Positions 42,805 through 64,000 of a stretch of 64,000 nt of DNA are shown here, piece by piece; positions within the stretch are counted from its first letter, which is position 1, and the number at the start of each line of letters is the position of its first letter. The stretch lies in contig CM097887.1 in assembly GCA_044892525.1 (NCBI GenBank), positions 20,584,001-20,648,000 on the forward strand, in the 5' to 3' direction. A model generated the notes under the pieces. That model was not told the DNA's origin and searched no databases. It saw nothing but the letters and a program-made list of their open reading frames with translations. The stretch is from Schmidtea polychroa. Lineage: Eukaryota. A program made the translations under genes and the position numbers.

Positions 42805-45122
42805 CTTATAGGGCTTGTCTCAGTATCCACTTTAATTTTATTTACTTAATTATGTTGATTAAAACAACAAAAAAAAATAACTCAAACTAAAAATGTTTGG
42901 CTGTTTATGGGCTTGGTCTAACATTTGTTCGTTTTATTATTGGAAATTGCATGTTCCGTTATTTGTATGTTCATCAATTTTTTCAACCTTTTCTTGGATC
43001 AATTAAATTTTACATGGAATAATAATCTATAATATTAAAACATTAATACATTTATATTATGGAGACACATAAATTTACTTGTGTGTTAAATTTAAATGTT
43101 TCATGATTACACCCGTTTGTGAAATATAACATAGCCTATAATCTAAAAAAAATCAATAAATATATATTATAGGAACACACCACTGTGTGTAAAAATTTAA
43201 TGCTGCGAAAGTTAACATATTTATTATAGGAATCTAAAAAGTGAGAGAAAATAATTAAGCATACAAACACAGCACACATAATGAAAAATACATACAAAAT
43301 TAAGTAAAGTGTTTTTTTTGCGAAATTAACATTGATTAACATATAATTAACATATTAATTATTTTCAAATTATTTAAAAGTTATGCGCAAAAAAACTTTT
43401 AAATCAGATTCCGACTGCTCTACCTTAGGCTTTAGAGAAAAAGAAGAATACATCGTAAGATTTAATTATAAAATAATTTTGAATATAAAATTTCTTTAGA
43501 TTTACAGATATTGAAGGTCCTTCGACATCTTTGAATTTGCAGGAAAAAAATCGCAAATCGTAAATTTTAATAAATTATTTTAACAAATTAATATTTTCAT
43601 AGAATTACAGAAAAAGACAAAATTCGAAAGAAGATTACAAAAACTTAAAAAACTATTTTATCCATTCTTTACTAAATGTCTTAAAAAAATAAATGTTTTG
43701 TGAATACTTTATTTATTTATAATTATAAAAATATCTAACTTACATTTTTACGAAATAAATCCAAATAAAAATTCATAAAATTCCTAAAAAACACCTGAAA
43801 TTTAATTATCAATGTTATATTACAAATGTTGACTAACAGTAATATTTAAGAACTTGAATAATGATCTCATAATTATATAAAATCAAAATTCAAGTCCTAA
43901 AAATTACTTTAATTCAAAAACTTACCTTAAAACGATTTTTGAAAAATAGAATAAATGAAATTAAGTTAATATTGTCATATAATTGGTGACTCACCTCAGC
44001 TGGTGTGCACACCAACGTATATTATAGACAATGTTAACTTTCGCAAACGGGTGTAATAATATTTAATATAGAAATTGAGAAAAGGTAGAATGAAATAATA
44101 ACATTTTAAATATTATATTTTAAAGAAACAATGATAGATATAAATTTAAAATTTAATGTTCCAAGTTTTACTAGATTCTGCTTTACTATTCGAAAAAATA
44201 ATAAGGAAAACATTAAATGATTAAGACGAATTTCATTTTAAATGGTTTTTATGAATACCAAAAAGTTTATTTAGCTTTATAAATTTTAAATATTATAAAA
44301 TAAATGTAAAAATATAAAAACATAATTTAGTAAAATTTCGCCAATTTTGTCCCAAAATCATAACCATCAAATTTAAGTTAAAAATAATTAAAACTTTCTC
44401 TAAATTGAAAAAAATTCCAAAAAATACCAAAGTTACGTAATTAAATTATATTAATAAATTAAATAATTAAATTTTGAATAAAACGAATTATTACTTTTCA
44501 GATTTAAGGAAATCCGGCTTGACGACCAAAAATTATTTTTCAAAATTTTTATAAATATCTTTTTTATTTAGTTATTTATCAATTTAGTTAATTTTACTTA
44601 TTCGTTTATTCTTATTGAATTAAAATTATTTGTTTGAATATTCAATTGAAAAATTATTATTTGAAATTTAAAGAAAACAGAAAAAATAAAAAAATTATTA
44701 AACAACATCAATTAACAAAAAAAATAATTTTATTTTTATATAGTTTATGAAAATGATATAAAATAAAGGGCATTCCTGTAGGAATTGAAGGCAGTAGCAA
44801 ATCGACAGTTACCAATACCTTTTATTATGACACCCAATGTAAATATAAATATCCCAAAAGAAATTTGATATCGCAAAAATCTTGCGTTTGTGAGTTTTAC
44901 AAAATGGGTTGCTAAAATAATTTATAAAATATATATTTAAAAGAAGTTTTGAAACGAAATTAATGTGAATGACGATGACCCCATTTGGGGGGGGGGTGCT
45001 ATATAAGTGATTGTTTAATAATATCAAGGATGACATTGCAATTTCAGAAAGAATTTATTCGGGAAATATTCTCAAAACATTTACAAATCAGATTCATCAG
45101 AAATAATAAAAGGTCTCAAACA

Positions 45123-45486
45123 TCATTTCGAAAGGTTTTCATTTTGTTCACCAATAATCACACGAAACGGTGGCATCCTTCCCGGTAACGCAAGATTGTC
45201 AACATTGCTAGTAGAATCATATTTGGTATCGAATTCGTGAGATTCCGGCAAGACTTTTCCTTTACGGTTTCTGTTAAATCTTTGAACTCCAAGAATTACA
45301 ATTATTATTGCAATGCTGGCGCCTGCTGCCATAATGACGGATATTATTATAATATTGTATTGGTATTGGTGATTATGACTCCATTTTCCATTTTCATCCA
45401 CCGATAATCGGACCCCCATAGGAGTTTCCAGAGAGGTGACGACAGTCATATTGGGTCCGAATCCCAACTAACAAAGACAATTTTAA

Positions 45487-45557
<71 letters not shown>

Positions 45558-47895
45558 TAGTAATAATATAAAGTCTTACATCAATAAAAGGTGGTCGGTA
45601 GAGAGGAGGTTGCTCCCTCGTGCTAAGAGCGTTATTCCTAACGCAATAAGAAATTTGACAAGCTCGGTCGACAATGGCCACATGAGATGAATATCCGGTT
45701 GAGCAACCTTGAGGCCAATATTTGGGATCTTGGGTAATATTGTGGAGAGTACTATCTAGAAGAGGATTTCCAACTTTGCAACTGAACCAGAATATGAAAC
45801 TCATTTATCATATGTATAAGATAGGGAATAATTNNNNNNNNNNNNNNNNNNNNNNNNNNNNNNNNNNNNNNNNNNNNNNNNNNNNNNNNNNNNNNNNNNN
45901 NNNNNNNNNNNNNNNNNNNNNNNNNNNNNNNNNNNNNNNNNNNNNNNNNNNNNNNNNNNNNNNNNNNNNNNNNNNNNNNNNNNNNNNNNNNNNNNNNNNN
46001 NNNNNNNNNNNNNNNNNNNNNNNNNNNTAGAATAATACCTATACATTCCTCCGAATGGCAAATGATCCCCTAAAGCCTTTTCCTTATTGAATGCTAAACA
46101 AATCTTGGCAGTCATTCCAAATTGGGATGCATAATAATTCTCTGGACAATTATAGGAACTGGTAATTGGATTTGGATAAGATTTTGTGTAAAATCCTCCA
46201 AATAAGGCACCTTCAGTATATCTGGCTTGATTTTTAGGAGCACACCAATAGAGTGCATAATGTGAGCATTCACCCTCGCATTTATTCAATCCACTTTGCA
46301 ATTCAATGGTTTCGTAGTTATCAGGGCAGGAATAACCGTTTGTTACTGGGTTAACTGCGTTTACATCTACGCACTGGGACGTTGGGCCTGTGCAGGTTTG
46401 AAAAGTTCCTCCTAGCGTATAGAATGTATTAGGAGGTTCACAAGTTCCACCATCAACATTCGCATCGTCATTGAAATTCTCTGACTCCATATTCATGCAT
46501 CCTAATGGAATGAGATCATATTATTACGGAAACATTGGAATGAAAATGAAAATTTATCTTACCCACTCTCGTGTTGGCAGCGTAATATCTATTCACAGCT
46601 TCTTTGATAAGCGTTGAGATTTTGTAAACTATTTTCTCGTCAAATTCTGGAAGACTTCTCGGTGTGATTGCATAGTTCAAGGGTTCACCTTTGCGATCAA
46701 TTGCAACCAAATTTGTTTCTAGGGTTTTCTCCCAATCTTCCAGTTTAAAATTCGAACCAAATGGTATACCACCAAAGGTTTCAATTTTAGTGCTGGCACT
46801 ATTATTATTAAATTCATTGAGGTTCGTGGTGTCACCAACATAGGTTCCTTTGAGGTTGATTGAAAGCATTGTTGTCATACTGAATGATGCGGCAGCTGCT
46901 ANNNNNNNNNNNNNNNNNNNNNNNNNNNNNNNNNNNNNNNNNNNNNNNNNNNNNNNNNNNNNNNNNNNNNNNNNNNNNNNNNNNNNNNNNNNNNNNNNNN
47001 NNNNNNNNNNNNNNNNNNNNNNNNNNNNNNNNNNNNNNNNNNNNNNNNNNNNNNNNNNNNNNNNNNNNNNNNNNNNNNNNNNNNNCTTTGACATAATTTG
47101 ATTTTAGAACGTCAGTTTTGATTAGAGTCGCTCCCGCGTCCACCGACCTAATGACATGAGTGCCGAAGTCACGGACAATTAAATCCGCTAAATATTGCGG
47201 ATAAATTGTGTCTTTCCCCTCCTTCAATAACGCTCCGATATCCAGAATTCGGTTCCGGAATTCAGGATCAAATTTGGAGTCTGGTTGGAATGAAACGGTA
47301 TATAATTCATGCCTCAACTGAGCTCGAGAAACTGACGACTTTTCTTTGATCTGAATTAAATTCGCTGATATAAATTACATTTACTTTGAATAGTTTTACT
47401 TGATCGTTCTTTATTGCTATTTTTTCAAATGAAAATGATCCACTGATCTTATAACCTATTGAAGCAAAGCTTGCGTCAGCATTTATAGACATTGCTGTTG
47501 CCGACGTGATGTTAGAGAAATGATCGAATATGTCAGAGGTTAAATCAACAGTAGATCTCTTATTTGGTCTGATTATTATGTCTTTTGGAATGAGAAAGCT
47601 GCCATCATTCGAAGCCAAACATTCTTTATATGAAATTTCCAATACTTGACCAAGTTCCTTGTTTTCAAGATTATCCCATCCAGATCCTGGAAGGATATCG
47701 AATGCGTATTGTTTGTTGGTAAGTTTGCACTCATGGACTCGCCTCTCTGATGGGAGGTCTCTGTTCGATTCGCCTTCACATGAGACGGATCTGAAAATAT
47801 TACTCCTTCAATAAAGTCTCCATTTTATCATTTACTTACAGAACTCCACAAACAAATATAAATAATATTATATTACTAAATCTACACCGTATCAT
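45123..47895 (-). CDS. MPEG1: Perforin-2/MPEG1 copy A (signal peptide, MACPF, P2, TM, tail); contains N gaps
   Basis: Spliced N-terminus MIRCRFSNIILFIFVCGVL|SVSC, LPGSGWDNL, FGTHVIRSVDAGA, WEKTLETNLVAIDRKGEPL, CMNMESENFNDDANVDGGTC, LFGGFY, CKVGNPL, and a hydrophobic TM segment near the C-terminus. Confidence 0.9.
45487..45560. repeat. (AAT)n microsatellite in the last intron of MPEG1 copy A
   Basis: AAT run between the LYRPPFID exon and the LGFGPN exon. Confidence 0.9.
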
Positions 47896-48558
47896 TGATT
47901 TCACGCTTGAGTAAATAAATGGTCAATTTGATTCCCGTTTGAAAGATTTATATTGTTTCAGGATGCACGTGATTAGAATGATCCGATTGTAGTAGAGATT
48001 CAGAATGATTACATCATCACAATGTCTACTTTGCATGTTATCGCGACTCGAGTGATGTGAATCATTCAATGAAATTTCGGCGCTCGAATTTTAATGTCAT
48101 TAATCACTCGAAATTTATTTAATTATAAATTAAAATTTTTACGCTCTACAGTTGTTCTTCATAAGGCTCCACAGCTGAATAAGAAAGCAAAAGTTAATTA
48201 ATATTTGTTAGTGAAGAGTTTTCAAATTAGAGGATATTGTAGGTCCCCGAACACATATTGGCCATTGGAAGCGATATCAGGAAAGTTGAAACCTTGAAAA
48301 CTAAACTGAAATTAATTTATAAAATGATTAATGCAGGAATTTCAAGTGATTCAAATAATCAATATTAAAGTGCCCACGATTGATTAAAATAATTCACATC
48401 ACTCAAGTCACGATAGCCCTCACCGTCGATATTGTGATGATGTAATCATTCCGAATCTCTACTACAATCGGATCATTCTAATCACGTGCATCCTGAATCA
48501 ATATAAATCTTTCAAACGGGAATCAAATTGAACATTTATTTACTCAAGCGTGAAACCA

Positions 48559-51484
48559 ATGATACGGTGTAGATTTAGTAATATAATATTATTTATATTT
48601 GTCTGTGGAGTTCTGTAAGTAAATGATAAAATGGAGACTTTATTGAAGGAGTAATATTTTCAGATCCGTCTCATGTGAAATTGATTCTAACAGAGACCTC
48701 CCATCATCAAGACGAGTCCATGATTGTAAACTCACCAGTAACCAATATCCAGTGAATGTTCTGCCAGGATCTGGATGGGATAATCTTGAAAACAAGGAAC
48801 TTGGACAAGTTTTGGAAATTTCATATAAAGGATGTGTGGGCTCGAATGATGGGAGCTTTCTCATTCCAGATGATGTGGTCATATCCCCCATAAAGAAATC
48901 TATTGTCGAATTAACCTCTGACATATTTGATCATTTCTCTAATGTCACATCAACAACGGCGATGTCTATTAATGCTGATGCCAGTTATGCAACACCAAGC
49001 TACAAAATAAGCGGATCATTTTCATTTGAAAAGAAAGCAATAAAGAACGATCAAGTAGAAATATTCATGACAAATGTAGTTGATATCAGCGAATTTATTT
49101 CAGATCAAAGAAAAGTCGTCGATTTCTCGATCACAATTGCGACATGAATTATATAAAGTAGTGTTTCAACCACATTCAAAATTAGATACAAAGTTCCGGA
49201 ACCGAATTCTAGATATTGGGGCGTTATTGAAGGATGGGAAAGACACAATTTATCCACAATATTTAGCGGATTTAATTGTCCGTGACTTCGGCACTCATGT
49301 CATTAGGTCGGTGGACGCGGGAGCGACTCTAATCAAAACTGACGTTCTAAAATCAAATTATGTCAAAGGTTTNNNNNNNNNNNNNNNNNNNNNNNNNNNN
49401 NNNNNNNNNNNNNNNNNNNNNNNNNNNNNNNNNNNNNNNNNNNNNNNNNNNNNNNNNNNNNNNNNNNNNNNNNNNNNNNNNNNNNNNNNNNNNNNNNNNN
49501 NNNNNNNNNNNNNNNNNNNNNNNNNNNNNNNNNNNNNNNNNNNNNNNNNNNNNNNNNNNNNNNNNNNNNNNNNNNNNNNNNNNNNNNNNNNNNNNNNNNN
49601 NNNNNNNNNNNNNNNNNNNNNNNNNNNNNNNNNNNNNNNNNNNNNNNNNNNNNNNNNNNNNNNNNNNNNNNNNNNTAGCAGCTGCCGCATCATTCAGTAT
49701 GACAACAATGCTTTCAATCAACCTCAAAGGAACCTATGTTGGTGACACCACGAACCTTAATGAATTTAATAATAATAGTGCCAGCACTAAAGTTGAAACA
49801 ATTGGTGGTAGGCCATTTGGTTCGAATTTTAAACTGGAAGATTGGGAGAAAACCCTAGAAACAAATTTGGTTGCAATTGATCGCAAAGGTGAACCCTTGA
49901 ACTATGCAATCACACCGAGAAGTCTTCCAGAATTTGACGAGAAAATAGTTTACAAAATCTCAACGCTTATCAAAGAAGCTGTGAATAGATATTACGCTGC
50001 CAACACGAGAGTGGGTAAGATAAATTTTCATTTTCATTCCAATGTTTCCGTAATAATATGATCTCATTCCATTAGGATGCATGAATATGGAGTCGGAAAA
50101 TTTCAATGACGATGCGAATGTTGATGGTGGAACTTGTGAACTTCCAAAATCGTATTACAATTTTGGTGGAACCTACCAAACTTGTAGGGGACCCGAAGAT
50201 CAATGTGAAAATATGTCGGAAAAGAACCTATTGACAAATGACTTTACCTGTCCAGCTGATTATGAAGCTGTTGAATTACAAAATGGATTGAATAAATGTA
50301 TTAAATATTGCGTAAGATCAATGTTTTCCCTCAAATGCAAATACAAGTGCTCCTATTACGCGTTGTATTGGTGTGCTTCTACAATCCAAACAAAAGTAAC
50401 AGAAGGTGCACTTTTCGGTGGATTTTACACCAAAACCTTTCCGAATCCGCTAACGAATTCATATAGTTGTCCACAATATTATACAGGTACAAGATTCGGA
50501 ATAAATGCAAAGGTTTGCACTGCACTCAACAAAGCAGAAGCGATGGAACACCATTTGCCGTTTGGAGGATTTTATAGGTGAATTTATAATTTAATCTTAT
50601 TTTGGATAATTTTCTGAATCTTCCAATGGAATTTATCCAATTTTATGTTATCTTTATATTTATAAACTCTTAATTTACTATTTTATACATATTATAAGTG
50701 ATTTTCATATTCTGGTTCAGTTGCAAAGTTGGAAATCCTCTTCTAGATAATGCTCTTCGTAATATTACCCAAGATCCCAAATATTGGCCTCAAGGTTGCT
50801 CAACCGGATATTCATCTCATGTGGCCATTGTCGACCGAGCTTGTCAAATTTCTTATTGCGTTAAGAATAACGCTCTTAGCATGAGAGAGCAACCTCCTCT
50901 CTACCGACCACCTTTTATNNNNNNNNNNNNNNNNNNNNNNNNNNNNNNNNNNNNNNNNNNNNNNNNNNNNNNNNNNNNNNNNNNNNNNNNNNNNNNNNNN
51001 NNNNNNNNNNNNNNNNNNNNNNNNNNNNNNNNNNNNNNNNNNNNNNNNNNNNNNNNNNNNNNNNNNNNNNNNNNNNNNNNNNNNNNNNNNNNNNNNNNNN
51101 NNNNNNNNNNNNNNNNNNNNNNNNNNNNNNNNNNNNNNNNTGGGATTCGGACCCAATATGACTGTCGTCACCTCTCTGGAAACTCCTATGGGGGTCCGAT
51201 TATCGGTGGATGAAAATGGAAAATGGAGTCATAATCACCAATACCAATACAATATTATAATAATATCCGTCATTATGGCAGCAGGCGCCAGCATTGCAAT
51301 AATAATTGTAATTCTTGGAGTTCAAAGATTTAACAGAAACCGTAAAGGAAAAGTCTTGCCGGAATCTCACGAATTCGATACCAAATATGATTCTACTAGC
51401 AATGTTGACAATCTTGCGTTACCGGGAAGGATGCCACCGTTTCGTGTGATTATTGGTGAACAAAATGAAAACCTTTCGAAATGA
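48559..51484 (+). CDS. MPEG1: Perforin-2/MPEG1 copy B; contains N gaps
   Basis: Same exon structure and motifs as copy A. ATG 48559; intron 1 GTAAGT...TTTTCAG; NDQ|IKEK junction; TM segment IIIISVIMAAGASIAIIIVILGV; TGA 51482-51484. Confidence 0.92.
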
Positions 51485-51870
51485 TGTTTGAGACCTTTTA
51501 TTATTTCTGATGAATCTGATTTGTAAATGTTTTGAGAATATTTCCCGAATAAATTCTTTCTGAAATTGCAATGTTTATCCTTGATATTATTAAAAGATTT
51601 TGTATTCTACAGTCTTACTATTAGAGATAAAAATAGAATATTATTAAAACTTTATTAAATTTAATTAATTTAAAATGAAGAGCTATTGAGATTTAGGATT
51701 CGTTGAGAAATATATGAAGTGTAAGGGGTTAAATAATTGATTTTTGATAGTTATTGTTATTATATTTATGATTATTGTTGTTTATATACTCACTCATGCA
51801 AGACCTAAAAACAACAAACATACAAGCACCTTAATTTTTAAATTTTCTGATGAATTTAATCGCTATAAAG

Positions 51871-53190
51871 CAGTGGTTCTCAATCCATAGGTCGCGGTCC
51901 AAAGGTGGGCCTTGACAGAGGATCTGGTGGGCCGCGATGAAGTCTAGAAAAGTACAAAAAGTAGAAGAAAATAAAAAATAAATCTGCGTTTACCACAAAT
52001 TGAAAGCAGCGGACTATTCGGATGCACGCTGCAGAATTGTAGATTACTATTCTACACCAAACACCACTGAGCACCGTTTCCTATAATATAACAAAAAAAT
52101 CAATAATCTTACATTATAGAAACATACATACTTACTTTGATTTCACGTTGATGTTCTCATTTATAGCTCAGTGAGATACATCTTATACTATAGAAATCTG
52201 AAAAGTGGAAGAAAAATTAAAAACTGCACACAAACGCAGCACATATTAAAAAACACATACAAACTTTTGATTCGTAGAAATGTAACGATGAGATACGTTT
52301 CTATAATAATTCTATTTTAGACAATTTTTAGAAAAAAAAGATCGTTGAAAATTCTTAAAATTATATTTTTAATGAAAATATCAAGAGCATATTAATTTGG
52401 TTCAATATCTTTTTACTCCAGATTTGATTTCCTTAAAGAATCCCCAGTTTAAACAGTGAGACAGTGTACCAGTTCGTTGAGTGTTACCCGCGATGACATC
52501 AGCAAACGCATGTTGCATTCTAAGCACTGTTTTTTATGTTTATTTCATAGCAGTATATAAACTATAAAAGGATAATAGTTTACATTTTACCGGCAGTTTG
52601 CTCATCTTTACAGAGATATTTTTATTGTTTTGAGTAAAGTTAGAGTCGTTAGAATTATATAAAAAATTTAAATTGTAAAATGGATCGTTTTCTAAAGTTT
52701 AAGCCTTTGACTTCGCACCACGAAACTTATAGTAGTGGCAACGATAGCAATCAAGATAAAATTTCAATTGATGTCTGTAAAAAACCAAATATACTCGAAA
52801 ATATGATGTGGATTATATAAAATACGGTTCGGTGCCATCAGAAAATGACGATATTTGAAATTCTGTCAGTGTGTGTGTGTGTGTGATTGCGTTGTCATCT
52901 TACTACAAGACTTCCGGATCTGCAGAAGAAACCAAAAGAATATTTCGAGCGCAAAGCCAGTGGATATACTAAACAGAGGGCAGTGTTAAAAACAACTTTT
53001 ATCCTCAACAAAAAGTGTTAAAGTATCGTACTTGATTGCCCAAAGAATTGCAAAAGGAAAGAAGCTTCACAAGATTGGAGAAGATTTTATCATGCCAACT
53101 GCTATAGAGATTTGCGACATATTCTTTGACTCGAAATACGCTCAAAGACCGAAAAGCATTCCAATCTCGAATGATACTGTTAATAGCTAA
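51871..53190 (+). mobile_element. Truncated, degenerate Buster-type hAT element
   Basis: 5' TIR CAGTGGTTCTCAA and transposase relics (EYFERKAS, YLIAQRIAKGKK, SIPISNDTV). No right end found. Confidence 0.7.
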
Positions 53191-54538
53191 ATCTTTTGAT
53201 GATTTTTGATTGTGCTTTTAATTTTTCGAATATTATGTAATTATTTTTCTTATAAAATTCAGCAATTTTGGGCAAAATAAATTAACATTAAAAAACTTAG
53301 ATATTTGCTTGTATGGAAATATTTGAGATTGGCAAATATCAAAAAGTTTTTAGAAAACATTCGTAATTTCTTTTTTATATTTAAAATGAGATTCTTACTT
53401 ATTTTGAAGTGCTCTTATTTATTGTTCAATTGTCAGTATTTTTTAGTTTAGACGCTTTGTGTACGTGTGTGTATGATTTTTTCTACTCCTCAAATAAATT
53501 TGTCAAATGACCTTATTTACTGTCATTATTGTTAATGACACACACACATATTTGTTATTGGTTAGTTATTGATGCTCTTGACTTTTGTCATTTAGACTAC
53601 TATTTATTGCGCTTTGGTGTATTGTTTTAAATCTATTCTAGAAATATAATTAGTAAAATTCCATAAAATTGGATCCAAAGTTCTAACCATAACCTAAAAT
53701 GGATTAATTGTTTCATTTTTATATATAGCGATGGACAATTTATTCAGTTTAATCAAATATTTATTTAAAAAAAATATTACACTGGAGTATTTTGTAATCA
53801 AATTATTTTACACTATTAAATTTAAATTATTTTTATTACACACAAATAAAAATTAAACTTAATTTTTAAAAATTTTTAATACAATAATCAATAAGTTTGA
53901 GAATGTACTTTTGGTCTGTTAAATATCGTCTCATGTATTTTACCTTCAACAATCACAATTTGATCACTATTTTATCCTTTTCAAATAACAACTGCTTAAC
54001 CTCTAAGGTGGTTTATTTCGTCAAACGAAATGCGCTCCTCAGCGGCGAGTTATGTTATCCGCTAGCGTATATATACAAAAAATAAAATAATATCTTATTG
54101 GATGATATTTATTAAGATAATATGTTAACAAAAGTAATATTTATGATATATTTTTATTCGTCTTATGTGTTTTGTAATGCATATGTTGATGACCTATTTA
54201 TCCGTCATAGCCACTTAAGAGGTTAAAAATTCAAAAGGATTTATTAAGTGTTCAAAAATTTGGTGCTTGTTTTTTTAATTTCCCCATAAAAAGTTTGTTA
54301 TTATGAATTTTTATTTTGTTATTTTTATGAAATATCGATTTTATTGCTATTAATATTTCTGAAATTTATTTTCAATCACCAGACTGTGAACGACTCTATT
54401 AACTGAATGCAATGACAGGCACACATACTCAGCACACAGAGCGGGCATGGAAAGCCAATGGAATTGAAGTATTTGATAATATCCAATGGGACAAAATGTT
54501 AATCTGGTTACCTAAATAAATGAAGCTGTTTTTAATTA

Positions 54539-54763
54539 CCGTATATACTCGTGTATAAGCCGATCCGTATATAAGCCGAAGTGAGTTTTTAGTCAATTTT
54601 TTGTCCAAAATCAAGTACCCGTATATAAGCCGAGGTAAAAAAAAATAGCTAAAATCTGACGAATTATTTAAATAATCACAAAATCTTGTTTTTGACATGT
54701 TAGCTTAAAAATTAGCTTAAAAAATTGCCCAAAATTTCTCGGCTTATACACGAGTATATACGG
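54539..54763. mobile_element. pogo/Tigger-like MITE, 225 bp
   Basis: Perfect 25 bp TIR CCGTATATACTCGTGTATAAGCCGA, flanked by TA. Confidence 0.9.
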
Positions 54764-54780
54764 TAAGTATTTTTCTAACT

Positions 54781-57046
54781 CAGCGATTCTCAACCGCCGG
54801 GTCGCGACCCCGTACCGGGTTGTGGAAGATTTTGTGCGGTTCGTGAGCAAATTTGAAAAAAAATTTATTTAATGCTAATTTCTTACAATTAATCAATAAA
54901 TATAATTTAAAAATTGCTAAAAATTAATCAAGTTTTTAATAATCCTAAACATTTTTCAATCCTAAAATGAAACGTAAAAAAAGACAAGCAACATTAAACA
55001 ATTTTGTTATAAAGGTTAACAATAACAGTTCAACAGCTGTTGAAAACAATGATGAAGAAGAAGTTCAATGTCCACCCGAAAAAATGAAGAGGTCAAGTTT
55101 TGTTCGCAAATACAACATTACTTTTTTAAGATTTGGATTTATTTCTTGGCCTGGATCAGATGCAAGTTGTCCCAAAGCACAATGTGTCATTTGTGGGGAA
55201 GTGCTGTCCAATGAAAGCATGAAAGCAAATAATTTATCACGACATTTGAACTCAAAACACAATGAATTGGAATCAAAACCAATTGATTTCTTTGAGAGAA
55301 AAGCTTCTGAGATAAAAAGCCAAAAAAATTCATTTCAAAAGTCCCTTTTAGCCAACAAATTTCTTTTAAAGGCTTCTTATTTGGTTGCTTTTCGAATGTA
55401 AAAAACCATTTTCAATTGCTGAAAAAATAATAAAACCATGCTTGGTGGATGTTTGTTCAGAGATTTTGGGTTTAAAAGCTGGTGAAAAATGAAGGCCATT
55501 CGTTTATCCAATGACACAATTGGAAGAAGGATTGAGGAATTATCGGCAGATATTGAAGATCAACTCATCGAAAAGATGAAGAAGTCAGAGTCATTTGCAA
55601 TCCAAATGGATGAGTCAACAGATGTTGCAAACAAAGCAGTTCTTTTATGTCATGGTAGATATGTTGATTATGACAGCAGTGACCTCAAAGAAGACCTTTT
55701 GTGTTGCAGTGAGATTCCCTCTTACACAACCAGTTCAGAAATCTTTCGCATCATTGATGAATATGTCAAAAAAAATTCTTTGAACTGGAAATTGTGCATT
55801 GGATTTGTACAGATGGTGCAGCTAACATGGTTGGAAGACTTTCAGGTGTAAGAGCAAGAATCCAAGAAGTTGCTGGTGATACATTTAAATTTACTCACTG
55901 TGTTATTCACCGTGAGCATTCAGCAACAAAAAAAATGTCTCCCGAATTACATGAAGTTCTTTCAGTTTCAATTCAGATTGTTAATTTCATCAAGAGCAAC
56001 GCACTAAATTCCCGATTGTTCACAATTCTGTGTGATGAAATGGATTCAGGAAATTCACAGTTGCTACTTCACGGTGAAGTGCGCTGGCTTTCCAGAGGGA
56101 GAGTTCTTACAAGGCTCTACGATTTGCGAGATGAGGTGAAAAATTCAGATCATGCCAAACATTTATTTGATGAAGAATGGATTGCAAAACTTGCTTATTT
56201 ATCAGACTTCTTTTCTCTGATAAATCAGCTGAATCTGAGTCTACAAGGTCCAATGACAACTGTCTTCAATGTCTGGAATAAAATTGATGCTTTTAAGAAA
56301 ACAATAAAAACTTGGTTAAACCACACACAAGAGCAGAATTATGAAATGTTTCCTTCATTTAACAATTTCACAGAATCTTTTGACTTGAATTTGGATAATG
56401 TTGTTTCTTGTATCACTCAACATTTAGAATTGCTTGCTCAAATGTTTGACAGCTACTATCCACCTAATGACGATGTTCGATTTGGAAACATGTGGATATC
56501 CAATCCATTTCTTGATCACCAACAAAACAACCTTTCAAACACAGAAGCAGAAAAATTGATTGAGTTATCATCAGATATGGGATTGAAATCAATGTTTAAC
56601 TCAATGACCATTATACAGTTTTAGATAAAAGTCAAGGAGGAATATCCAGCCCTCAGCAAAATTGCCATTCATATTTTATTACCCTTTTCTACAACTTACT
56701 TGTGTGAATCAGCATTTTCAGCAGTGTCAATTATTAAAACGAAGCAAATAAACAGGTTATTTACTGGCCCTGCTTTGCCACTTGCTATCACTTCTTTAAA
56801 ACCAAGAATAGACAAACTGGTACGAGAGAAAGAGCAACAACAATCACATTAATTTATAAAATTATGTTTCTAATTGTTTTGATTTCGTTATTGTTGATCC
56901 TTTTATAATAAATATTTTGTTCATCTGTTAACTTCTTTTTAAATTATTAATTTTATTAGATTGTAAAGTCAAACTGAATTTACGGGTCGTGAAAAAGAAT
57001 TGAGATTATTTACGGTCCGTACTGCTTTTTGGGTTGAGAAACACTG
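54781..57046 (+). mobile_element. Full-length Buster/ZBED8-like hAT with disrupted transposase (54967 to about 56850)
   Basis: TIR CAGCGATTCTCAACC / GGTTGAGAAACACTG; TSD TTCTAACT / CTCTAACT (7 of 8). Motifs CVICGEVLSNESMK..LSRHLNSKH, QMDESTD, CTDGAANM, HCVIHREH, EVRWLSRG, PFSTTYLCESAFS. Several frameshifts and stops. Confidence 0.92.
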
Positions 57047-57306
57047 CTCTAACTCATAAAATTAAAAAAGAATTTTTAAACAAAATAAATATATAAAATT
57101 ATGATAATAACAATTTGAATGCTGACAGTTAGTAAAAACAATTTATGATACTCAATTCGAGATATTACAACATAAGGTCATCAGAATGACGTAATCATGC
57201 GGATTCTTGAATATGTTCAGATAACCCTTATCACGTGAGTCCTTAACAGCATATTTCATTCATATAGGAACCAAAATACTCATTTGTTTATTCAACAGTA
57301 AAACCA

Positions 57307-60300
57307 ATGATACTTGGTACATTTAATAATATTTTATTATTTATATTTGTTTGTGGAGTTCTGTAAGTAAAAAATAAAATGGAGACTTTATTGAAGGAGT
57401 AATATTTTCAGATCCGTCTCATGTGAAGACGAATCGAACAGAGACCTCCCATCAGAGAGGCGAGTCCATGAGTGCAAACTTACCAACAAACAATACGCAT
57501 TCAATATCCTTCCAGGATCTGGATGGGATAATCTTGAAAACAAGGAACTTGGTCAAGTATTGGAAATTTCATATAAAGAATGTTTGGCTTCGAATGATGG
57601 CAACTTTCTCATTCCAGACAACGCGGTTATTATTCCAATCAAAAGGTCGACTGTTGAATTAGCATCTGACATATTTGATCATTTCTCTAATTTCACATCT
57701 GCTACTTCGAAATCCATAAATGCTGATGCAAGTTATGCAACACCAAGCTACCAGATCAGTGGCTCGTTTTCGTGGGAAAAAAAGGATGTAAAGAATGATC
57801 AAGTAACAATGTCCATGGTTAAAGTAACTGATATTAATGAGTTTACTTAGATCAAAGAAAAGTCATCGGTTTCTCGAGTACAATTGAGGCATGAATTATA
57901 TACCGTTTCATTCCAACCAGATTCGAAGTTCGATCGTAAATTCCGGAACCGAATTCTGGATATCGGAGCGTTATTGAAGGAGGAGAAAGACACAATTTAT
58001 CCGCAATATTTAGCGGATTTAATTGTCCGTGACTTCGGCACTCATGTCATTAGGTCGGTGGACGCGGGAGCGACTCTAATCAAAACTGACGTTCTGAAGT
58101 CGAAATACGTCAAAATGTTCAAAGTTATTTAAAATTATTGTTATAATTATAAATATAATAATTATAATATCACAATTTTGCTGCTTTCTCATTGGTCAAA
58201 ACAATTTGTATTAAGACTAAGCACCTTTTACTTGGGAGGAAGCTCATCTTCTCAAAATCACTGTCAATCCTTTCTTATATTATTTCTAAAGCAAATATTT
58301 TAATTTTTCAAATGAAATTAAATTTTACAGACAATAAATAAAAACAATATCAGTTTTAAATCTTGTACACAGCATCCGAGGTGACAGTGGCGTAGCCAGG
58401 GGGGGGGGGGTTGGAGTTGAGAAATATTTATTAATATAATAGTCAATCATTTCAAGTGTGGACGAATGAGAGTACAGACAGATGTCACGGTATTACATTT
58501 ACAGTAAATAAAATAAAGGAAAGAAGTGTCTTGTTTTTATCTTATTTAGGTGGATGATCTTTTAGACACTTGACATCGACAAATATTTGTCTGCTAGATT
58601 TATATCTGCTAGATTTCAAGATATTTTTCCTTTGACTTGAAACACGGAAAATTATAGTTATTTATATAAGAATATTTTCAGATCGTATATTCATCAAAAT
58701 AATTGACAGGGAGATACAACAACAATAGCAGCAGCTGCATCCTTTAGTATGACAAAAGTTCTTGGAGTTACAATAAAAGGAAATTACTTCAGTGACACCG
58801 CCAGCCTAAATGATTTCAACAATAACAGTGCAAGTACTAAAGTTGAAACAGTTGGTGGTAGTCCATTTGGTTCAAACTTCAAATTGGAAGATTGGGAAAA
58901 ATCTCTTGAGACAAACTTGGTGGCCATTGATAGAAGAGGTAATCCATTATTCTATGCAATAACACCAAGAAGTCTCCCAGAATTTGATGATAAAATCGTT
59001 TATAAAATTGTTACTCTTATCAAGGAAGCTGTCAACCGATATTATGCGGCCAACACACGAGTAGGTAAGATAAACTTTCATAATAAAAAAAATGATGAGA
59101 CTAGGATGTATGAATATGGAGTCGGAAAATTTCAATGACGATGCAAATATTGATGGGGGAACATGTGAAACTCCGAAATCATATTACACTCTTGGAGGAA
59201 CGTTTCAAACATGCACAGGACCGAGTAATCAATGTGAAAGCGTAGCTAGCATGAACCCAATAACGAATAGCTATTCGTGTCCTGCAAACTACAAAACCAT
59301 TGAACTGGAAAGTGGATTGAGTAAATGTGAAAAGGTTTGCGTTAGAACTAGTTGGTTTCGTTATAGTTGCAATTACGAATGTTCATATTACGCACTCTAT
59401 TGGTGTTCAGCAACAATAAAGACAACAAAGTCAGAAGGATCTTTATTTGGTGGATTTTACACGAATACCTACCCAAATCCGATTACAAATGCTTATAATT
59501 GCCCACAAAATTATTATCCTTCTCGATTCGGAATGGTTGCAACAATCTGTTTGGCATTCAATAGAGCAGAGGCAATGGAACATCATTTGCCTTTCGGAGG
59601 ATTTTACAGGTAACACGTGTTTAACATAAACACAATGCATTCAAGTAAATATTTATGTCGGGTTGTACAAAAGAGTGCTGAAATAAAATTTAAATGTAAA
59701 ATTACTTAAAATTCAAAATTAATAAAAACTGAATCAAGTGTAAAAATAAATATTTTGCCAGAGAAGGAATAGAGGCAGGGCTCTCTAAAGAAATCCGGCG
59801 TCCGTGGGCTACTAAAAATAATGTGTAAGAAAATTAGATAAAGAACATTTAGATAAAGAAATTCACCCGGGCGGCGAGTATACATAGGTGGTCAACTCAC
59901 ATTTAAGTCGTCCATTTCATGGCATCATAAATGATTGTAATATCGTTTCTCATTCCAGCCCATTTGAATATAAAAATCAGTTAAATATTTTAAGAAATTG
60001 TTAAGAAAACAACATATACATCGCAAATAATAATTTCCGCCCCAAAAGGCTTGCGTCCAAGGACTATAGCCCATTTAGCCCTCTGATTAGGGCAGCCCTG
60101 AATAGAGATAGGTTGCAATGAAAAAAAGAAGAATCTAATAATTTCAAATTGATACGAAGTCTTAGAAGATGTTAATGTAAAAATGCAAATTAATTAATCA
60201 ATTAATTAAGATATTGTTGACAACATTACTCATTCCAACAAGAAAACAAAATCACTCAAACACTATTTATATTCACTATTTATAGTCATCGTTTGGTAGA

Positions 60301-62253
60301 AATGAAAATATATATGAGGTACACGATATTTCGGCACAGCCTTTATCAACTGGATTGGATTGTTTTGCCATGGAAGATTATTGTATCCCTAAATACTTGT
60401 GTTACATAATCTAGCAACAATAATAGTGATATTTGTTGAATCCTGGAGGCAAAGTATTCAATTTCTGTGTCTGAATACTAAGCCACTAAGCTCGATTCCG
60501 AATTGAAGTGAGTTTCATTGATGGTATCGATGAGAGCCAAATAAACTCAAAACTAATTTTGTCATTAGAAATTTCAATAAACATATCTTTTAAAGTTTAC
60601 TAAGTTTGCTGTTCACTAAAACCCGATAAATTATGGACATCAAGGATCAGTCAACGCTTATCGTACGCTTTTGTAGGCGGTATCTATCTCACAGATATGG
60701 CTGACTGAGGGTTCATATATGAGAGAAATATGTAAGAGAAAAGGCTTAGTCTTTGTAATACTTGAATGTTAAACCAAAAATAATTTTATATAATTTAATT
60801 TTGAAAAGAATTTAATAATTTGCTTGAGCTCCTATTCAATTCGGACTCTCCCAAAGCTATGAGCCAAACGCCTTGCCACTGTTAAAGGGTTCTTAAAGGG
60901 TATGAATGAAACTTCAAGACAAATTATTGTTAAGTTCAAGTAAAAAAATACGTTGGCATTTCTTTAACAGCTTGTTCATTTAAATATTCTATTATTTTCT
61001 GTGGCTTGCAAACGATTATTTTAATTATATTTTCGAATTTTTCTCGATTATTCTGAGAAATTCCGAGAAAATTCTTTTTTTACACTCAACTTTTATTTAC
61101 TCCTAATAATAATTGTTTATTATTTAAATAAACAAAATTTTATTTTATCATAATTTGAACCAAGTCAATGATTATTAATAATTTATTAAAATCAAAATTT
61201 TTGTTTAATAAATAAAACAAAATTTTTTTGTAAATATTTTTTATATTTAAAATACTGTTATTGTATCATAATAAACATTAATGTTTTTAATTAACTTTAT
61301 TTAATTTTTTTATCAATTGAACATTTTTACATTTTTTACTTTACACAATTTTACTTCACGATTAATATATTACCTTTCTNNNNNNNNNNNNNNNNNNNNN
61401 NNNNNNNNNNNNNNNNNNNNNNNNNNNNNNNNNNNNNNNNNNNNNNNNNNNNNNNNNNNNNNNNNNNNNNNNNNNNNNNNNNNNNNNNNNNNNNNNNNNN
61501 NNNNNNNNNNNNNNNNNNNNNNNNNNNNNNNNNNNNNNNNNNNNNNNNNNNNNNNNNNNNNNNNNNNNNNNNNNNNNNNNNNNNNNNNNNNNNNNNNNNN
61601 NNNNNNNNNNNNNNNNNNNNNNNNNNNNNNNNNNNNNNNNNNNNNNNNNNNNNNNNNNNNNNNNNNNNNNNNNNNNNNNNNNNAATCCGCTCTCAGATAA
61701 ATTTGCAGATAATATTACACAAGATCCCAAATATTGGTCGCAAGGTTGCTCGACCGGATATTCATCTCATGTGGCCATTGTCAACCGAGGCTGTCAAATT
61801 TCATACTGTATCAAGAATAATGCACTTAGTCGAAGGGAGCAACCTCCTCTGTATAGACCCCCATTCATTGATGTAAGAATAATTGCATCTTTGCTTTATG
61901 CCATTTTCTGTTAGTTGGGATTTGGACCAAATGCGACCGTCATTACCAGTATAGAAACTCCAATTGGACTCAGACTGTCAGTCGACGAAAATGGGAAGTG
62001 GAGTGACAACAACGAACCCAAATCATCCAATTATAATATTATAATATTTTCCGTAACCGCAGCGGCAATAATCACCATAATGATTATAATTTTAACTATT
62101 GAAGTTCAAATATATAAAAAAACTCGAAGAATTGCAGTTTTGTCGGAATATAGGAATGGAAGCGTTAGGAACAATCTTGAAAGTTCTTTGAATAATCCAA
62201 CAGCATCAAATCGTGTTCAGCCATTTCAAATGCTTATAGATGAGAATCAATAA
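57307..62253 (+). CDS. MPEG1: Perforin-2/MPEG1 copy C, with expanded introns and an N gap
   Basis: ATG 57307 (MILGTFNNILLFIFVCGVL|SVSCEDES), 49 bp intron 57363-57411, MACPF and P2 exons, divergent TM/tail exon 61915-62253. Confidence 0.92.
59776..60100. mobile_element. hAT-type MITE in an intron of MPEG1 copy C
   Basis: TIR CAGGGCT / AGCCCTG; TSD AATAGAGG / AATAGAGA (7 of 8). Confidence 0.75.
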
Positions 62254-62764
62254 ACAATAACGAAAATTAAATTAAATAATTAATTAACTTTAATTTAAAA
62301 TTATTTATCAATAAATTGTTTGTAGACTTTACTAATTTGTTCGTTAACTTATNNNNNNNNNNNNNNNNNNNNNNNNNNNNNNNNNNNNNNNNNNNNNNNN
62401 NNNNNNNNNNNNNNNNNNNNNNNNNNNNNNNNNNNNNNNNNNNNNNNNNNNNNNNNNNNNNNNNNNNNNNNNNNNNNNNNNNNNNNNNNNNNNNNNNNNN
62501 NNNNNNNNNNNNNNNNNNNNNNNNNNNNNNNNNNNNNNNNNNNNNNNNNNNNNNNNNNNNNNNNNNNNNNNNNNNNNNNNNNNNNNNNNNNNNNNNNNNN
62601 NNNNNNNNNNNNATAAATCACGCTGCAATTGAGAAATAAAGCTGTCAACTGAAAAATTATAAAATAATTTAATATATGTTCTGATTTCGTAATTGGTAAG
62701 TAAAACTGTGAATATTAGATGGATCATAAAGATTCAATAAAAACTTTCAAAAAAGTCCTTTCCA

Positions 62765-64000
62765 TTAAGTTGCTATGAAGGTGTCGATGAGTACCGAAAA
62801 TGAATGCAATCGGTTTAATATTTTAAACGGAATAAAAACGGACCGAACGATTTTCCAAATATTATCACTTCCACGTTCCAATGAATCCATTGATTTGACA
62901 TAGTTGATCAGTTCAGCAACACCGAATCCGAAATTGATCAACCATAAAACCAAACATGGATTTAAGTATCGTTTCCAGAATACAGTCTTTCCAGTTCTTC
63001 GACTCTTCATGAAAAAATCGACCTTTCTATGAAGGATTTCCTTTATCAAAGCCCACTGTAATAACTGTTGGATAATAAGGAAAACACCTTCTACTATTGC
63101 CATAGTCACATAAGGTTCCTTCGAATACTCCATGATTATCATCGCTTCGAGAACTTGAAAAAAGGTTCCAAAATTTAAAATGAATCCATCAATCTTTGAT
63201 CTTTGCTGTTTCCCTACTTGGCAATAAAGGATTTCATGCAAATACCACAACGTAAAAGCGATGGAAATAACACAAATGGCAATTGTACTGTTGTAATAGG
63301 ATGGATAACAATCAATGAATGCGCCCGTGACATTCAGATAAATCTCGTAATGATTTCGACACGACGCCTCACTGAAGATTAATGTTATCACACAAGAAAT
63401 CCCTATTGCTATGGAAAGAAAATTATTTTTCAAAGGCAATGAAAGTTCATGTATATTTTCATTAATAAGAGGGACAGTTTCATCTTCCTCCACATGAATC
63501 TCTTCCTGGTAGACGTTGTTCAAACACGAAAGCGTATGCTGCATTTTAACTACTTGATCGACATCATCATGACAGAGAAAGAAAATGTAAATACTTGAAA
63601 CGAAAAGAAAGAAAATGGCAAACATTCGAAATTCGGTTTCGGATTTTTCTAGAGTCTCGCAGTATATTGAGTTTATTATATATCGCCACGAGGTAAACAA
63701 ACAACATAAATAAACACAAAATCCAGACAGAATAGACGAGATAATCGTCAGTTTTTCATTCGGATCAGGTCTCCATTTCAAGTAAAGAGGTAAATAAAAA
63801 AACATAATGAACATGAATATGATCAATAGGATCTCATTTAGAGGGTCTTTGTTTCCAATCTCTTGAATCGTGTAAAAAATACCCATTGAACCAAAGAGCA
63901 TATTTGATATTAGAAAAGGCAAATTGATGATTTGGAACCATTTTCCCTTGCCTCTTCGAAATATGCAGAGTGCAATATGGGAGAGCATTGTTAATATGGC
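62765..64000 (-). CDS. Multi-pass membrane protein, probable divergent otopetrin-family proton channel; 5' end outside the window
   Basis: Open frame of at least 407 aa with many hydrophobic segments. The C-terminus WKIVRSVFIPFKILNRLHS resembles the otopetrin W..I..I..P..IF(Y/F)RFHS signature; QQLLQWALI and LWLINF resemble the preceding otopetrin TMs. Confidence 0.55.
   Translation of the reverse strand, partial: AILTMLSHIALCIFRRGKGKWFQIINLPFLISNMLFGSMGIFYTIQEIGNKDPLNEILLIIFMFIMFFYLPLYLKWRPDPNEKLTIISSILSGFCVYLCCLFTSWRYIINSIYCETLEKSETEFRMFAIFFLFVSSIYIFFLCHDDVDQVVKMQHTLSCLNNVYQEEIHVEEDETVPLINENIHELSLPLKNNFLSIAIGISCVITLIFSEASCRNHYEIYLNVTGAFIDCYPSYYNSTIAICVISIAFTLWYLHEILYCQVGKQQRSKIDGFILNFGTFFQVLEAMIIMEYSKEPYVTMAIVEGVFLIIQQLLQWALIKEILHRKVDFFMKSRRTGKTVFWKRYLNPCLVLWLINFGFGVAELINYVKSMDSLERGSDNIWKIVRSVFIPFKILNRLHSFSVLIDTFIAT

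What the first reader, a model, noticed from the sequence alone, without database searches (positions are those of the whole stretch)
45013..62253. Perforin-2/MPEG1 triplet with mosaic identity: signs of segment exchange in an immune effector cluster
Seen: copies A and B are head to head, with upstream homology ending about 220 bp apart. A matches B in promoter, exon 1, the later MACPF exon and the last two exons (identical TM/tail protein). A matches C almost exactly over about 190 bp of exon 2 (3 mismatches by eye), where B differs. A stretch of exon 3 (YPQYLADLIVRDFGTHVIRSVDAGA) is the same in all three, while the P2 exons differ in all three. Inference: patchwork gene conversion. Recombination between identical blocks of the inverted arms would also invert the centre and swap N-terminal halves between A and B, creating new pore/targeting combinations.
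Basis: partly seen in the sequence, partly recalled or inferred. Interest (0 to 1): 0.7.

Follow-up and report, generated by a model that had tools for sequence, protein, structure and literature searches.

The report
Mosaic MPEG1 gene triplet, gene conversion
Three neighbouring copies of the pore-forming immune gene MPEG1/perforin-2 in an AT-rich animal genome have repeatedly copied stretches of sequence onto one another, a well-known process (gene conversion) seen here for the first time, as far as I could find, in this gene family, while their membrane-binding domain has stayed different.

Summary
The window carries three complete-looking, seven-exon MPEG1/perforin-2 genes: A (minus strand), B and C (plus strand). 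A and B are head to head, as 3.1 to 3.3 kb inverted arms around a 222-bp spacer.

Identity is a sharp patchwork:
- A and B differ at 0/434 sites in exon 7 plus the 3'UTR, 6/338 in exon 4 and 4/124 upstream.
- A and B are only 65% identical in most of the P2/MABP exon.
- A and C differ at 2/170 sites in the 5' part of exon 2, where B differs at 29.
- All three are nearly identical over 137 nt of exon 3.

Synonymous divergence between A and B runs from 0 to saturation within one gene, and introns are homogenised too. Protein constraint therefore cannot explain the pattern. Interlocus gene conversion on an old triplication is the best reading.

The N runs behave as true assembly gaps in (ATT)n-rich introns. 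Spliced RNA contigs cross three of them, and the two that cut into B's exons are crossed in frame. Contigs from two other DNA studies reproduce the centre and both flank junctions of the shared 3' end. Which arm holds each gap-flanked P2 contig remains unverified.

The inversion and domain-swap idea is logically sound but untested. This is a known process in a new gene family, of moderate interest.

The parts
45123..47895 (-). MPEG1 copy A. CDS exons: e1 47895-47840; e2 47790-47400; e3 47350 to the gap at 47086; e4 from the gap at 46901 to 46563; e5 (P2/MABP) 46501-46039; e6 45781-45580; e7 (TM and tail) 45467-45123.
   Evidence: Splice motifs and open frames. RNA contigs splice intron 5 at 46039/45781 and intron 2 at 47400/47350. 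PDB MPEG1 hits.
48559..51484 (+). MPEG1 copy B. CDS exons: e1 48559-48614; e2 48664-49054; e3 49104 to the gap at 49372; e4 from the gap at 49676 to 50014; e5 50076-50577; e6 50721 to the gap at 50918; e7 from the gap at 51141 to 51484.
   Evidence: RNA contigs bridge both gaps in frame and mark intron 2 (49055-49103, 49 nt). PDB hit.
57307..62253 (+). MPEG1 copy C. CDS exons: e1 57307-57362; e2 57412-57802; e3 57851-58123; e4 58710-59064; e5 59105-59609; e6 start hidden in the gap, visible 61684-61872; e7 61915-62253.
   Evidence: Pfam MACPF. PDB MPEG1 P2 hit, E 1.7e-24. No expression data were obtained for C.
45014..48115 (-). Inverted-repeat arm carrying copy A.
   Evidence: Self-blastn. 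Homology to B ends abruptly at 45014.
48338..51594 (+). Inverted-repeat arm carrying copy B.
48116..48337 (.). Unique 222-bp spacer between the arms. The start codons are 663 bp apart, so this is probably a shared divergent promoter region.
   Evidence: DNA contigs of runs X1 (47972-48482, 0 differences) and X5 (47972-48341) span it in the same arrangement.
47606..47775 (-). A=C conversion tract in the 5' part of exon 2. Partner in C is 57427-57596. A-C differ at 2/170 sites, A-B at 29/170. Synonymous differences A-C are 0/35.
47106..47242 (-). Exon 3 tract around the MACPF signature that is homogenised in all three copies. Partners are B 49212-49348 and C 57959-58095.
   Evidence: 1 to 5 differences in 137 nt. 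(synonymous differences at most 4/33).
46438..46901 (-). A=B tract covering exon 4, intron 4 and the first 64 nt of exon 5. Partner is B 49676-50139. 8 differences in 464 nt.
   Evidence: dS 0.034.
46039..46437 (-). Island of old divergence: the rest of the P2/MABP exon. Partners are B 50140-50577 and C 59169-59609. Identity is 65 to 72% in all pairs and dS is saturated. A lacks 42 nt here.
45033..45467 (-). A=B tract covering exon 7 and the 3'UTR. Partner is B 51141-51575. 0 substitutions in 434 nt and one 1-nt indel.
45487..45568 (.). (AAT)27 microsatellite in A's intron 6. B's assembly gap 50919-51140 sits at the homologous place.
   Evidence: Contig loose ends at the gap edges run into ATT repeats.

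Best explanation
An old local triplication of a seven-exon MPEG1/perforin-2 gene has been partly re-homogenised by repeated, short interlocus (non-allelic) gene conversion.

- Synonymous divergence is saturated wherever nothing has been overwritten.
- Conversion tracts run from roughly 140 bp to at least 450 bp.
- The longest and youngest tracts join the two inverted pairs: A-B (upstream region with exon 1, exon 4 with intron 4, exon 6, exon 7 with the 3'UTR) and A-C (5' part of exon 2, part of exon 3).
- One tract around the MACPF signature is shared by all three copies.
- Two regions have escaped: the 3' part of exon 2, and most of the exon for the P2/MABP membrane-binding domain. The three genes therefore keep different lipid-binding modules on partly shared pore-forming and anchor modules.

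Shown here: the mosaic, its significance, homogenised synonymous sites and introns, transcription and correct splicing of A and B, and the existence of two copies of the shared blocks in other individuals.

Inferred: conversion as the mechanism, the old age of the triplication, and that the islands persist through selection or simply because divergence itself blocks further conversion.
For: - A-B dS by exon is 0.58, 0.33, 0.03, 2.5, 0.07 and 0. A-C dS by exon is 0.39, 0.23, 1.8, 1.6, 0.94 and 1.5.
- Sub-block synonymous counts: A-C 0/35 in the exon 2 tract against 26.7/43.8 in the next block; A-B 2.5/74 in exon 4 against 65.5/83 in the P2 exon.
- Intron 4 is identical in A and B (0/62). Exon 1 end plus intron 1 is 95 to 99% identical in all three.
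- The permutation run test gives p<=5e-5 for all three pairs.
- Rooted exon trees conflict. Exon 4 gives (A,B) at 90/91. Exons 3 and 5 give (A,C) at 81/84 and 84/82. A, B and C are always one clade, and no closer donor exists in the genome, where the next P2 hit is at most 41% identical.
- Control: the tandem paralogues I and J have uniformly low dS (0.02 to 0.15) including the P2 exon, so the P2 exon is not intrinsically fast at silent sites.
- Independent contigs: X1 and X5 reproduce the centre and the block edges. The shared blocks carry about 1.75 times the k-mer depth (87 to 89 against about 50). One X1 contig runs from the shared 3'UTR into A's flank and others run into B's.
- Allelic differences between the reference and X5 are about 1.1 to 1.7% (4/370, 7/494, 14/807). 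That is more than the A-B difference in exon 7 (0/434), so that tract is very young.
Against: - The reference is gapped exactly in this locus: six N runs lie in the triplet's introns, and none in 80 kb of the other MPEG1 clusters.
- The two P2-bearing contigs (46028-46901 and 49676-50918) are flanked by gaps on both sides, so their arm assignment rests on scaffolding that I cannot check.
- Short-read polishing can homogenise near-identical paralogues.
- Logan contigs pop bubbles, and their depth is explicitly not a copy number.
- With three sequences, the direction and number of conversion events cannot be resolved.
- The per-exon tree supports are moderate; none is starred.
Confidence: 0.8

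Rival explanations
1. Assembly artefact. The identical A/B blocks would be one sequence placed twice, or paralogues homogenised by polishing. The mosaic would then come from mis-threaded short contigs in a gapped scaffold.
For: - N gaps sit at homologous introns of A and B and start within a few bases of the exon edges.
- Gap density is unusual for this assembly.
- The contigs carrying the P2 exons are bounded by gaps on both sides.
Against: - The switches in identity lie inside uninterrupted sequence: 46438 in contig 46028-46901, and 47606 and 47243 in contig 47086-49372.
- A and B differ at 6 clustered sites inside the nearly identical exon 4, so it was not assembled as one sequence.
- In run X1 the shared blocks have about twice the k-mer depth of the unique parts and branch into both A's and B's flanks.
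- Two other DNA studies give the same contig break points (47629, 46466).
- Spliced RNA contigs contain both P2 exons.
Confidence: 0.08
2. Single history without conversion. A and B would be a recent inverted duplication, and the divergent parts (P2 exon, exon 2) would reflect accelerated or diversifying evolution. The regions shared by all three copies would reflect purifying selection.
For: - The P2/MABP domain is the least conserved exon across all 11 paralogues.
- The tract identical in all three copies encodes the MACPF signature, which is under strong constraint.
Against: - Selection on protein cannot create saturated synonymous divergence next to dS of 0 to 0.03 in the same gene pair. 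Nor can it erase synonymous and intronic differences.
- dN/dS in the P2 exon is 0.10 to 0.15, which is not elevated.
- The recent duplicates I and J show dS of 0.05 in the P2 exon.
- The near identity of A and C (2/170) inside a gene that is elsewhere 59 to 77% identical to C cannot arise on an ((A,B),C) tree.
Confidence: 0.04
3. Exon replacement from a lost or unsampled donor. A and B would be young duplicates, and one of them would have received its P2 exon and exons 2-3 from a fourth, now absent paralogue, or by unequal exchange with a haplotype that carries more copies.
For: - Copy number and sequence seem to vary between individuals: a 9-nt indel in exon 7 in X5, and A-type letters in B's exon 6 in X1 and X7.
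- Database protein P0001 is a B-like variant, 66% identical to C's P2 exon.
Against: - No closer donor exists in this genome: the next P2 hit is at most 41% identical.
- It is still gene conversion or recombination, differing only in the donor.
- It requires more events than homogenisation of an old triplet.
Confidence: 0.08

Closest known systems
MPEG1 / perforin-2 (human and mouse structures 6U23, 6SB1/6SB3; review PMC7593815)
   Same: The architecture is colinear: signal peptide, MACPF domain with an F-G-T-H-x7-G-A signature, P2/MABP domain, L-domain region, a single TM helix and a short basic tail. Exons 2, 5 and 6 hit the solved structures at E 4e-20, 1.7e-24 and 9e-9.
   Different: - Each gene is split into seven coding exons, with introns as short as 49 nt.
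- It belongs to an 11-member family in three clusters.
- Copy A has about 8 residues where mouse MPEG1 has 33 and B and C about 22, at the position of the MABP insert.
- Function, targets and localisation were not tested.
Arm-to-arm gene conversion in palindromes and inverted duplicates (for example the human and ape Y-chromosome palindromes; from my own knowledge, not checked here)
   Same: Two inverted arms with a short unique spacer and stretches of near-perfect arm-to-arm identity, maintained although other parts are old.
   Different: - The arms here are only about 3.2 kb long and each holds a single gene.
- Homogenisation is patchy rather than arm-wide.
- A third copy 9 kb away also takes part.
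- Spacer or arm inversion polymorphism, which is known for Y palindromes, was not testable here.
Mosaic paralogues with islands of divergence under interlocus gene conversion (GOT1 in Tigriopus, PMC3728101; HMA4 model, bioRxiv 10.1101/2025.10.29.685298; found, abstracts only)
   Same: Converted tracts alternate with persistently divergent islands, giving new combinations of segments among neighbouring paralogues.
   Different: This is a different gene family and a different, unidentified animal. The islands here coincide with a membrane-binding domain of an immune pore-former. No test shows that selection keeps the islands.

Membership tests
MPEG1 / perforin-2 | MACPF domain with the signature motif | tested here: met
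   Pfam PF01823 hits exon 3 (E 2.8e-6) and exon 4 (E 8.5e-7) of C. DFGTHVIRSVDAGA is present in all three copies.
MPEG1 / perforin-2 | P2/MABP domain C-terminal to the MACPF domain | tested here: met
   C's exon 5 aligns to mouse and human MPEG1 residues 336-515 at E 1.7e-24. A's exon 5 aligns in two stretches at E 1.5e-20.
MPEG1 / perforin-2 | Extended beta-hairpin insert of the MABP domain (lipid binding) | tested here: inconclusive
   B and C keep a Cys-rich insert shorter than the mouse one. A has about 8 residues against 33 in the mouse protein. No structure was predicted.
MPEG1 / perforin-2 | N-terminal signal peptide, single C-terminal TM helix and short cytosolic tail | tested here: met
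   Read directly from the translations. Exon 1 encodes a 19-residue hydrophobic leader. Exon 7 encodes a stretch of about 23 hydrophobic residues followed by a basic tail. No predictor was run.
MPEG1 / perforin-2 | Pore formation and an antimicrobial role | not testable with these tools
   Only transcription and splicing of A and B were seen, in one run guessed to be RNA.
Interlocus gene conversion (concerted evolution of paralogues) | Significant clustering of sites shared by one pair, beyond what shuffled site order gives | tested here: met
   Runs of 175, 17 and 9 sites against permutation maxima of 31, 9 and 8, p<=5e-5.
Interlocus gene conversion (concerted evolution of paralogues) | Homogenisation reaches silent sites and introns | tested here: met
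   dS is 0 to 0.03 in tracts against more than 1.5 outside them. Intron 4 differs at 0/62 sites.
Interlocus gene conversion (concerted evolution of paralogues) | Conflicting rooted topologies between adjacent segments | tested here: met
   Exon 4 gives (A,B). Exons 3 and 5 give (A,C). Support values are 81 to 91.
Interlocus gene conversion (concerted evolution of paralogues) | Paralogues within a species closer to each other than to their orthologues in a sister species | not tested
   No related genome was available, and the organism is not identified.
Recombination-driven inversion between inverted arms | Both orientations of the inner segment found among haplotypes | not testable with these tools
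   Only short-read contigs were available. They break at each shared block.

The most novel reading that the evidence does not exclude
The inverted A/B pair would act as a recombination cassette. Crossovers in the identical exon 4 or exon 7 blocks would repeatedly flip the inner segment. Haplotypes in the population, or even somatic cells, would then carry different pairings of the MACPF N-terminal half with the P2/MABP targeting half. Conversion would keep the crossover substrates identical while the targeting modules stay diverse.
Probability: 0.07. Interest if true: 0.8.

Novelty: new member of a known kind. Interest (0 to 1): 0.4.

Why it matters
MPEG1 is regarded as the ancestral animal pore-forming immune effector and is usually treated as a single, conserved gene. 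Here a lineage-specific triplet exchanges its pore-forming and anchoring segments, yet keeps three old and different membrane-binding (MABP) modules, one of them with a truncated hairpin. That gives a natural panel for asking which part of the protein sets target-membrane preference. It also adds an invertebrate immune effector to the list of families shaped by interlocus conversion. In practical terms, exon-by-exon orthology or dating of these genes will mislead unless the mosaic is taken into account.

Tried and rejected
- Species name: looking up database proteins P0001 to P0003 gave no organism, so the species stays unidentified.
- Literature: two searches found no report of MPEG1 gene conversion. 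That is absence in this library only.
- Positive selection: whole-exon dN/dS is 0.06 to 0.49 everywhere and 0.10 to 0.15 in the P2 exon, with saturated dS. No claim of diversifying selection can be made.
- Other head-to-head MPEG1 pairs in the genome (D/E, G/H) are saturated at silent sites and show no comparable homogenisation. Only one 450-nt stretch of 79% identity turned up, around exon 4 of D/E. Inverted orientation alone is therefore not sufficient.
- A-type letters at eight sites of B's exon 6 in runs X1 and X7 could be a segregating conversion tract. I rejected this as evidence because Logan contigs pop such bubbles.
- A listed X1 joint, 50674 to 47850 with 7 letters between, rests on a short AT-rich match. 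I treated it as noise.
- Contig depth was used only as a hint, because the tool warns that it is no copy number.
- Letters that contigs showed inside the N gaps were not used to fill any gap. Only their number was used, for the frame check.
Full report
**What is there.** The window is G000:C3:20584001-20648000 of a 781-Mb, AT-rich (66% A+T) animal genome. Between 45013 and 62253 lie three genes whose coding pieces all match MPEG1/perforin-2.

- Pfam MACPF hits exons 3 and 4.
- Solved human and mouse MPEG1 structures are hit colinearly. Exon 2 aligns to residues 14-120 (E 4e-20). The P2/MABP exon aligns to 333-515 (E 1.7e-24; A in two stretches). Exon 6 aligns to 517-579 (E 9e-9).
- From conserved splice motifs, open frames and RNA contigs, I derive the same seven-coding-exon model for all three copies (coordinates are under parts).
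- Exon 1 encodes a signal peptide. Exons 2 to 4 encode the MACPF domain. Exon 5 encodes P2/MABP, exon 6 the L-domain region, and exon 7 the TM helix and tail.
- Introns 1 and 2 are only 48 to 49 nt long.
- Every visible coding piece of A, B and C is open.

**The gaps, tested first.** Eight N runs lie in the window. Five of them sit inside the triplet's introns or exon edges, and a sixth (62353-62612) lies just downstream of C.

- 45834-46027 lies wholly inside A's intron 5. An RNA contig of run X7 joins 46039 to 45781 with GT..AG ends on the minus strand.
- 49373-49675 (B) is crossed by an RNA contig with 20 letters between the flanks. With the 2 hanging bases of exon 3 and the 2 leading bases of exon 4, that makes 24 bases, so it is in frame.
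- 50919-51140 (B) is crossed with 5 letters between the flanks. That gives 2+5+2 = 9 bases, also in frame.
- 46902-47085 (A) is colinear with B and C by homology only. The bridging RNA contig fits A's and B's flanks equally well.
- 61380-61683 hides C's exon 6 acceptor and about 13 nt of that exon, so C's integrity there is unknown.
- A's intron 6 holds an (AAT)27 array exactly where B has a gap. DNA contigs that run into the gaps end in ATT repeats.
- The N runs therefore behave as ordinary assembly gaps in microsatellite-rich introns. I filled none of them.

**The mosaic.** Self-comparison and three-way alignment show inverted arms, A 45014-48115 and B 48338-51594, around a 222-bp spacer.

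| Block | A-B | A-C | B-C |
|---|---|---|---|
| Upstream, 124 nt | 4 | 39 | 38 |
| Exon 1 end, intron 1, exon 2 start (100 nt) | 1 | 4 | 5 |
| Exon 2, 5' tract (170 nt) | 29 | 2 | 28 |
| Exon 2, 3' part (206 nt) | 44 | 54 | 47 |
| Exon 3 signature tract (137 nt) | 4 | 1 | 5 |
| Exon 4 (338 nt) | 6 | 78 | 75 |
| Intron 4 | 0/62 | 12/41 | 12/41 |
| Rest of P2 exon (399 nt) | 139 | 112 | 119 |
| Exon 6 | 8/198 | 38/189 | 37/185 |
| Exon 7 CDS (343-345 nt) | 0 | 140 | 140 |
| 3'UTR | 0/90 | 29/69 | 29/69 |

**More than chance, and not selection.**

- Among 710 polymorphic columns, the longest runs identical in one pair are 175 (A=B), 17 (A=C) and 9 (B=C). The permutation maxima are 31, 9 and 8, so p<=5e-5.
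- Fisher tests across adjacent blocks give 5e-8 to 7e-43.
- With three sequences, a pattern such as "A=C, B differs" could in principle be a long B branch. What excludes a single history is that the ratios of pairwise distances flip between blocks, and that they do so at silent sites.
- A-B dS is 0.58, 0.33, 0.03, 2.5, 0.07 and 0 for exons 1+2, 3, 4, 5, 6 and 7.
- Synonymous differences between A and C are 0/35 in the exon 2 tract and 26.7/43.8 in the next block.
- Introns 1 and 4 are homogenised too.
- dN/dS is low throughout, 0.10 to 0.15 in the P2 exon. Nothing indicates positive selection, although dS is saturated there and the ratio is weak evidence.

**Rooting and controls.**

- The genome has at least 11 MPEG1-like P2 exons, in three clusters. 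I fetched the other two clusters and mapped their exons.
- A, B and C are each other's closest relatives in every exon.
- Per-exon trees rooted by the other paralogues conflict. They give (A,B) in exon 4 at 90/91, and (A,C) in exon 3 at 81/84 and exon 5 at 84/82.
- No closer donor for any P2 exon exists in the genome. An old triplication that was later overwritten in patches is therefore more economical than a young A/B duplication with replaced exons.
- The tandem paralogues I and J give a useful contrast. They lie in a gap-free stretch and have uniformly low dS (0.02 to 0.15), including 0.05 in the P2 exon. The 0-to-saturated range in A/B is thus neither a family-wide rate pattern nor a property of the P2 exon.
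- The other head-to-head pairs (D/E, G/H) are saturated and not homogenised.

**Is it an assembly artefact?** I laid Logan contigs of four runs on 45700-51650.

- Runs X1 and X5 come from two different DNA studies. Each differs from the reference by some letters, so neither appears to be its source.
- Both runs span the centre: 47972-48482 with 0 differences in X1, and 47972-48341 in X5. Both reproduce the inter-gap contigs and break at the same points, 47629 and 46466, where paralogues start to share sequence.
- In X1 the contigs on A/B-identical blocks have about 1.75 times the k-mer depth of the unique ones (87.5 and 89 against 48 to 53).
- From the shared 3'UTR, one X1 contig runs into A's flank and others run into B's.
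- The tool warns that contig depth is no copy number, so I treat the depth as a hint only. Together with the branching, it argues that two copies of the shared blocks exist.
- The identity switches also lie inside uninterrupted reference sequence. A and B still differ at six clustered sites within exon 4.
- One point stays open. The two contigs that carry the P2 exons (46028-46901 and 49676-50918) have gaps on both sides, so which arm each belongs to rests on scaffolding.

**Expression.** Run X7 behaves as RNA. Its contigs skip introns at GT..AG sites and leave the promoter and introns almost uncovered. It contains both A's P2 exon (0 differences) and B's, spliced to their neighbours.

**Age of the tracts.** The reference differs from X5 by about 1.1 to 1.7% in single-copy parts (4/370, 7/494, 14/807). 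A and B differ at 0/434 sites in exon 7 plus the 3'UTR. That tract is therefore younger than typical allelic coalescence. X5 has a 9-nt insertion after 51247, at the place where C and database protein P0001 have three extra residues. The homogenised state itself therefore seems to vary in the population.

**Mechanism and limits.**

- The best explanation is interlocus gene conversion. The strongest recent exchange is between the two inverted pairs (A-B, A-C), and only short B=C patches link the direct pair. With three pairs, this orientation pattern is an anecdote.
- The two unconverted islands are the 3' part of exon 2 and the P2/MABP exon. They may be kept by selection for different membrane-binding modules, or they may persist simply because about 30% divergence blocks further conversion. 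The data do not decide between these.
- According to the review PMC7593815, the MABP hairpin binds negatively charged lipids.
- Copy A has about 8 residues where mouse MPEG1 has 33 and B and C have about 22.
- The inversion and domain-swap idea is sound as geometry, but I found no evidence for or against it.

**Novelty.** Conversion among clustered immune genes and between palindrome arms is well known. Two literature searches found no description of it for MPEG1. I rate this a new member of a known kind, of moderate interest.

Noticed in passing
47966-47971 (A), 48483-48488 (B), 57232-57237 (C); also upstream of paralogue K in G000:C4:54.15 Mb: A TCACGTG E-box lies about 77 nt upstream of the start codon of all three copies. 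K has the same flanks as C (TATCACGTGAG). Expectation is 0.05 per 700 nt. It resembles the E-box of MiT/TFE-type lysosomal gene promoters (from memory, not tested).
   Followed up: partly
46240-46300 (A exon 5): Copy A lacks 42 nt (14 codons) in the Cys-rich insert of the P2/MABP exon. About 8 residues align opposite 33 in mouse MPEG1. The shortened exon is transcribed: the X7 contig has 0 differences.
   Followed up: partly
50750-50886 (B exon 6): In runs X1 (DNA) and X7 (RNA), contigs that continue into B's intron 5 and P2 exon carry A's letters at eight A/B-differing sites. X5 and the reference carry B's letters. This is either a segregating conversion tract or bubble-popping in the contigs.
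   Followed up: partly
51247 (B exon 7): Run X5 has a 9-nt insertion here. C and database protein P0001 have three extra residues at the same place, so the indel seems polymorphic.
   Followed up: no
54967-56624 (+): Three adjoining ORFs (144, 120 and 276 aa) with a BED zinc finger lie between B and C. They look like a frame-broken hAT-type transposase.
   Followed up: partly
40572-42362 (-): An uninterrupted 596-aa ORF with a BED-finger-like N-terminus, probably a hAT transposase or a domesticated copy.
   Followed up: no
54533-54769: A 237-bp element bounded by 31-nt inverted repeats that are 97% complementary. It looks like a MITE.
   Followed up: no
62765-63988 (-): An intronless 407-aa ORF with many hydrophobic segments and no Pfam hit, directly downstream of C.
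   Followed up: no
G000:C3:30.90-30.98 Mb and G000:C4:54.13-54.16 Mb (L004-L020): Eight more MPEG1 paralogues with the same exon structure. There are two further head-to-head pairs (D/E, G/H), which are old and not homogenised, and a tandem trio (I, J, K). I and J are young, with dS of 0.02 to 0.15.
   Followed up: partly
48278-48333 (spacer): A low-depth X7 contig lacks 56 nt of the spacer, with CA..TG ends and 6-nt microhomology. It is probably an indel polymorphism rather than an intron.
   Followed up: no
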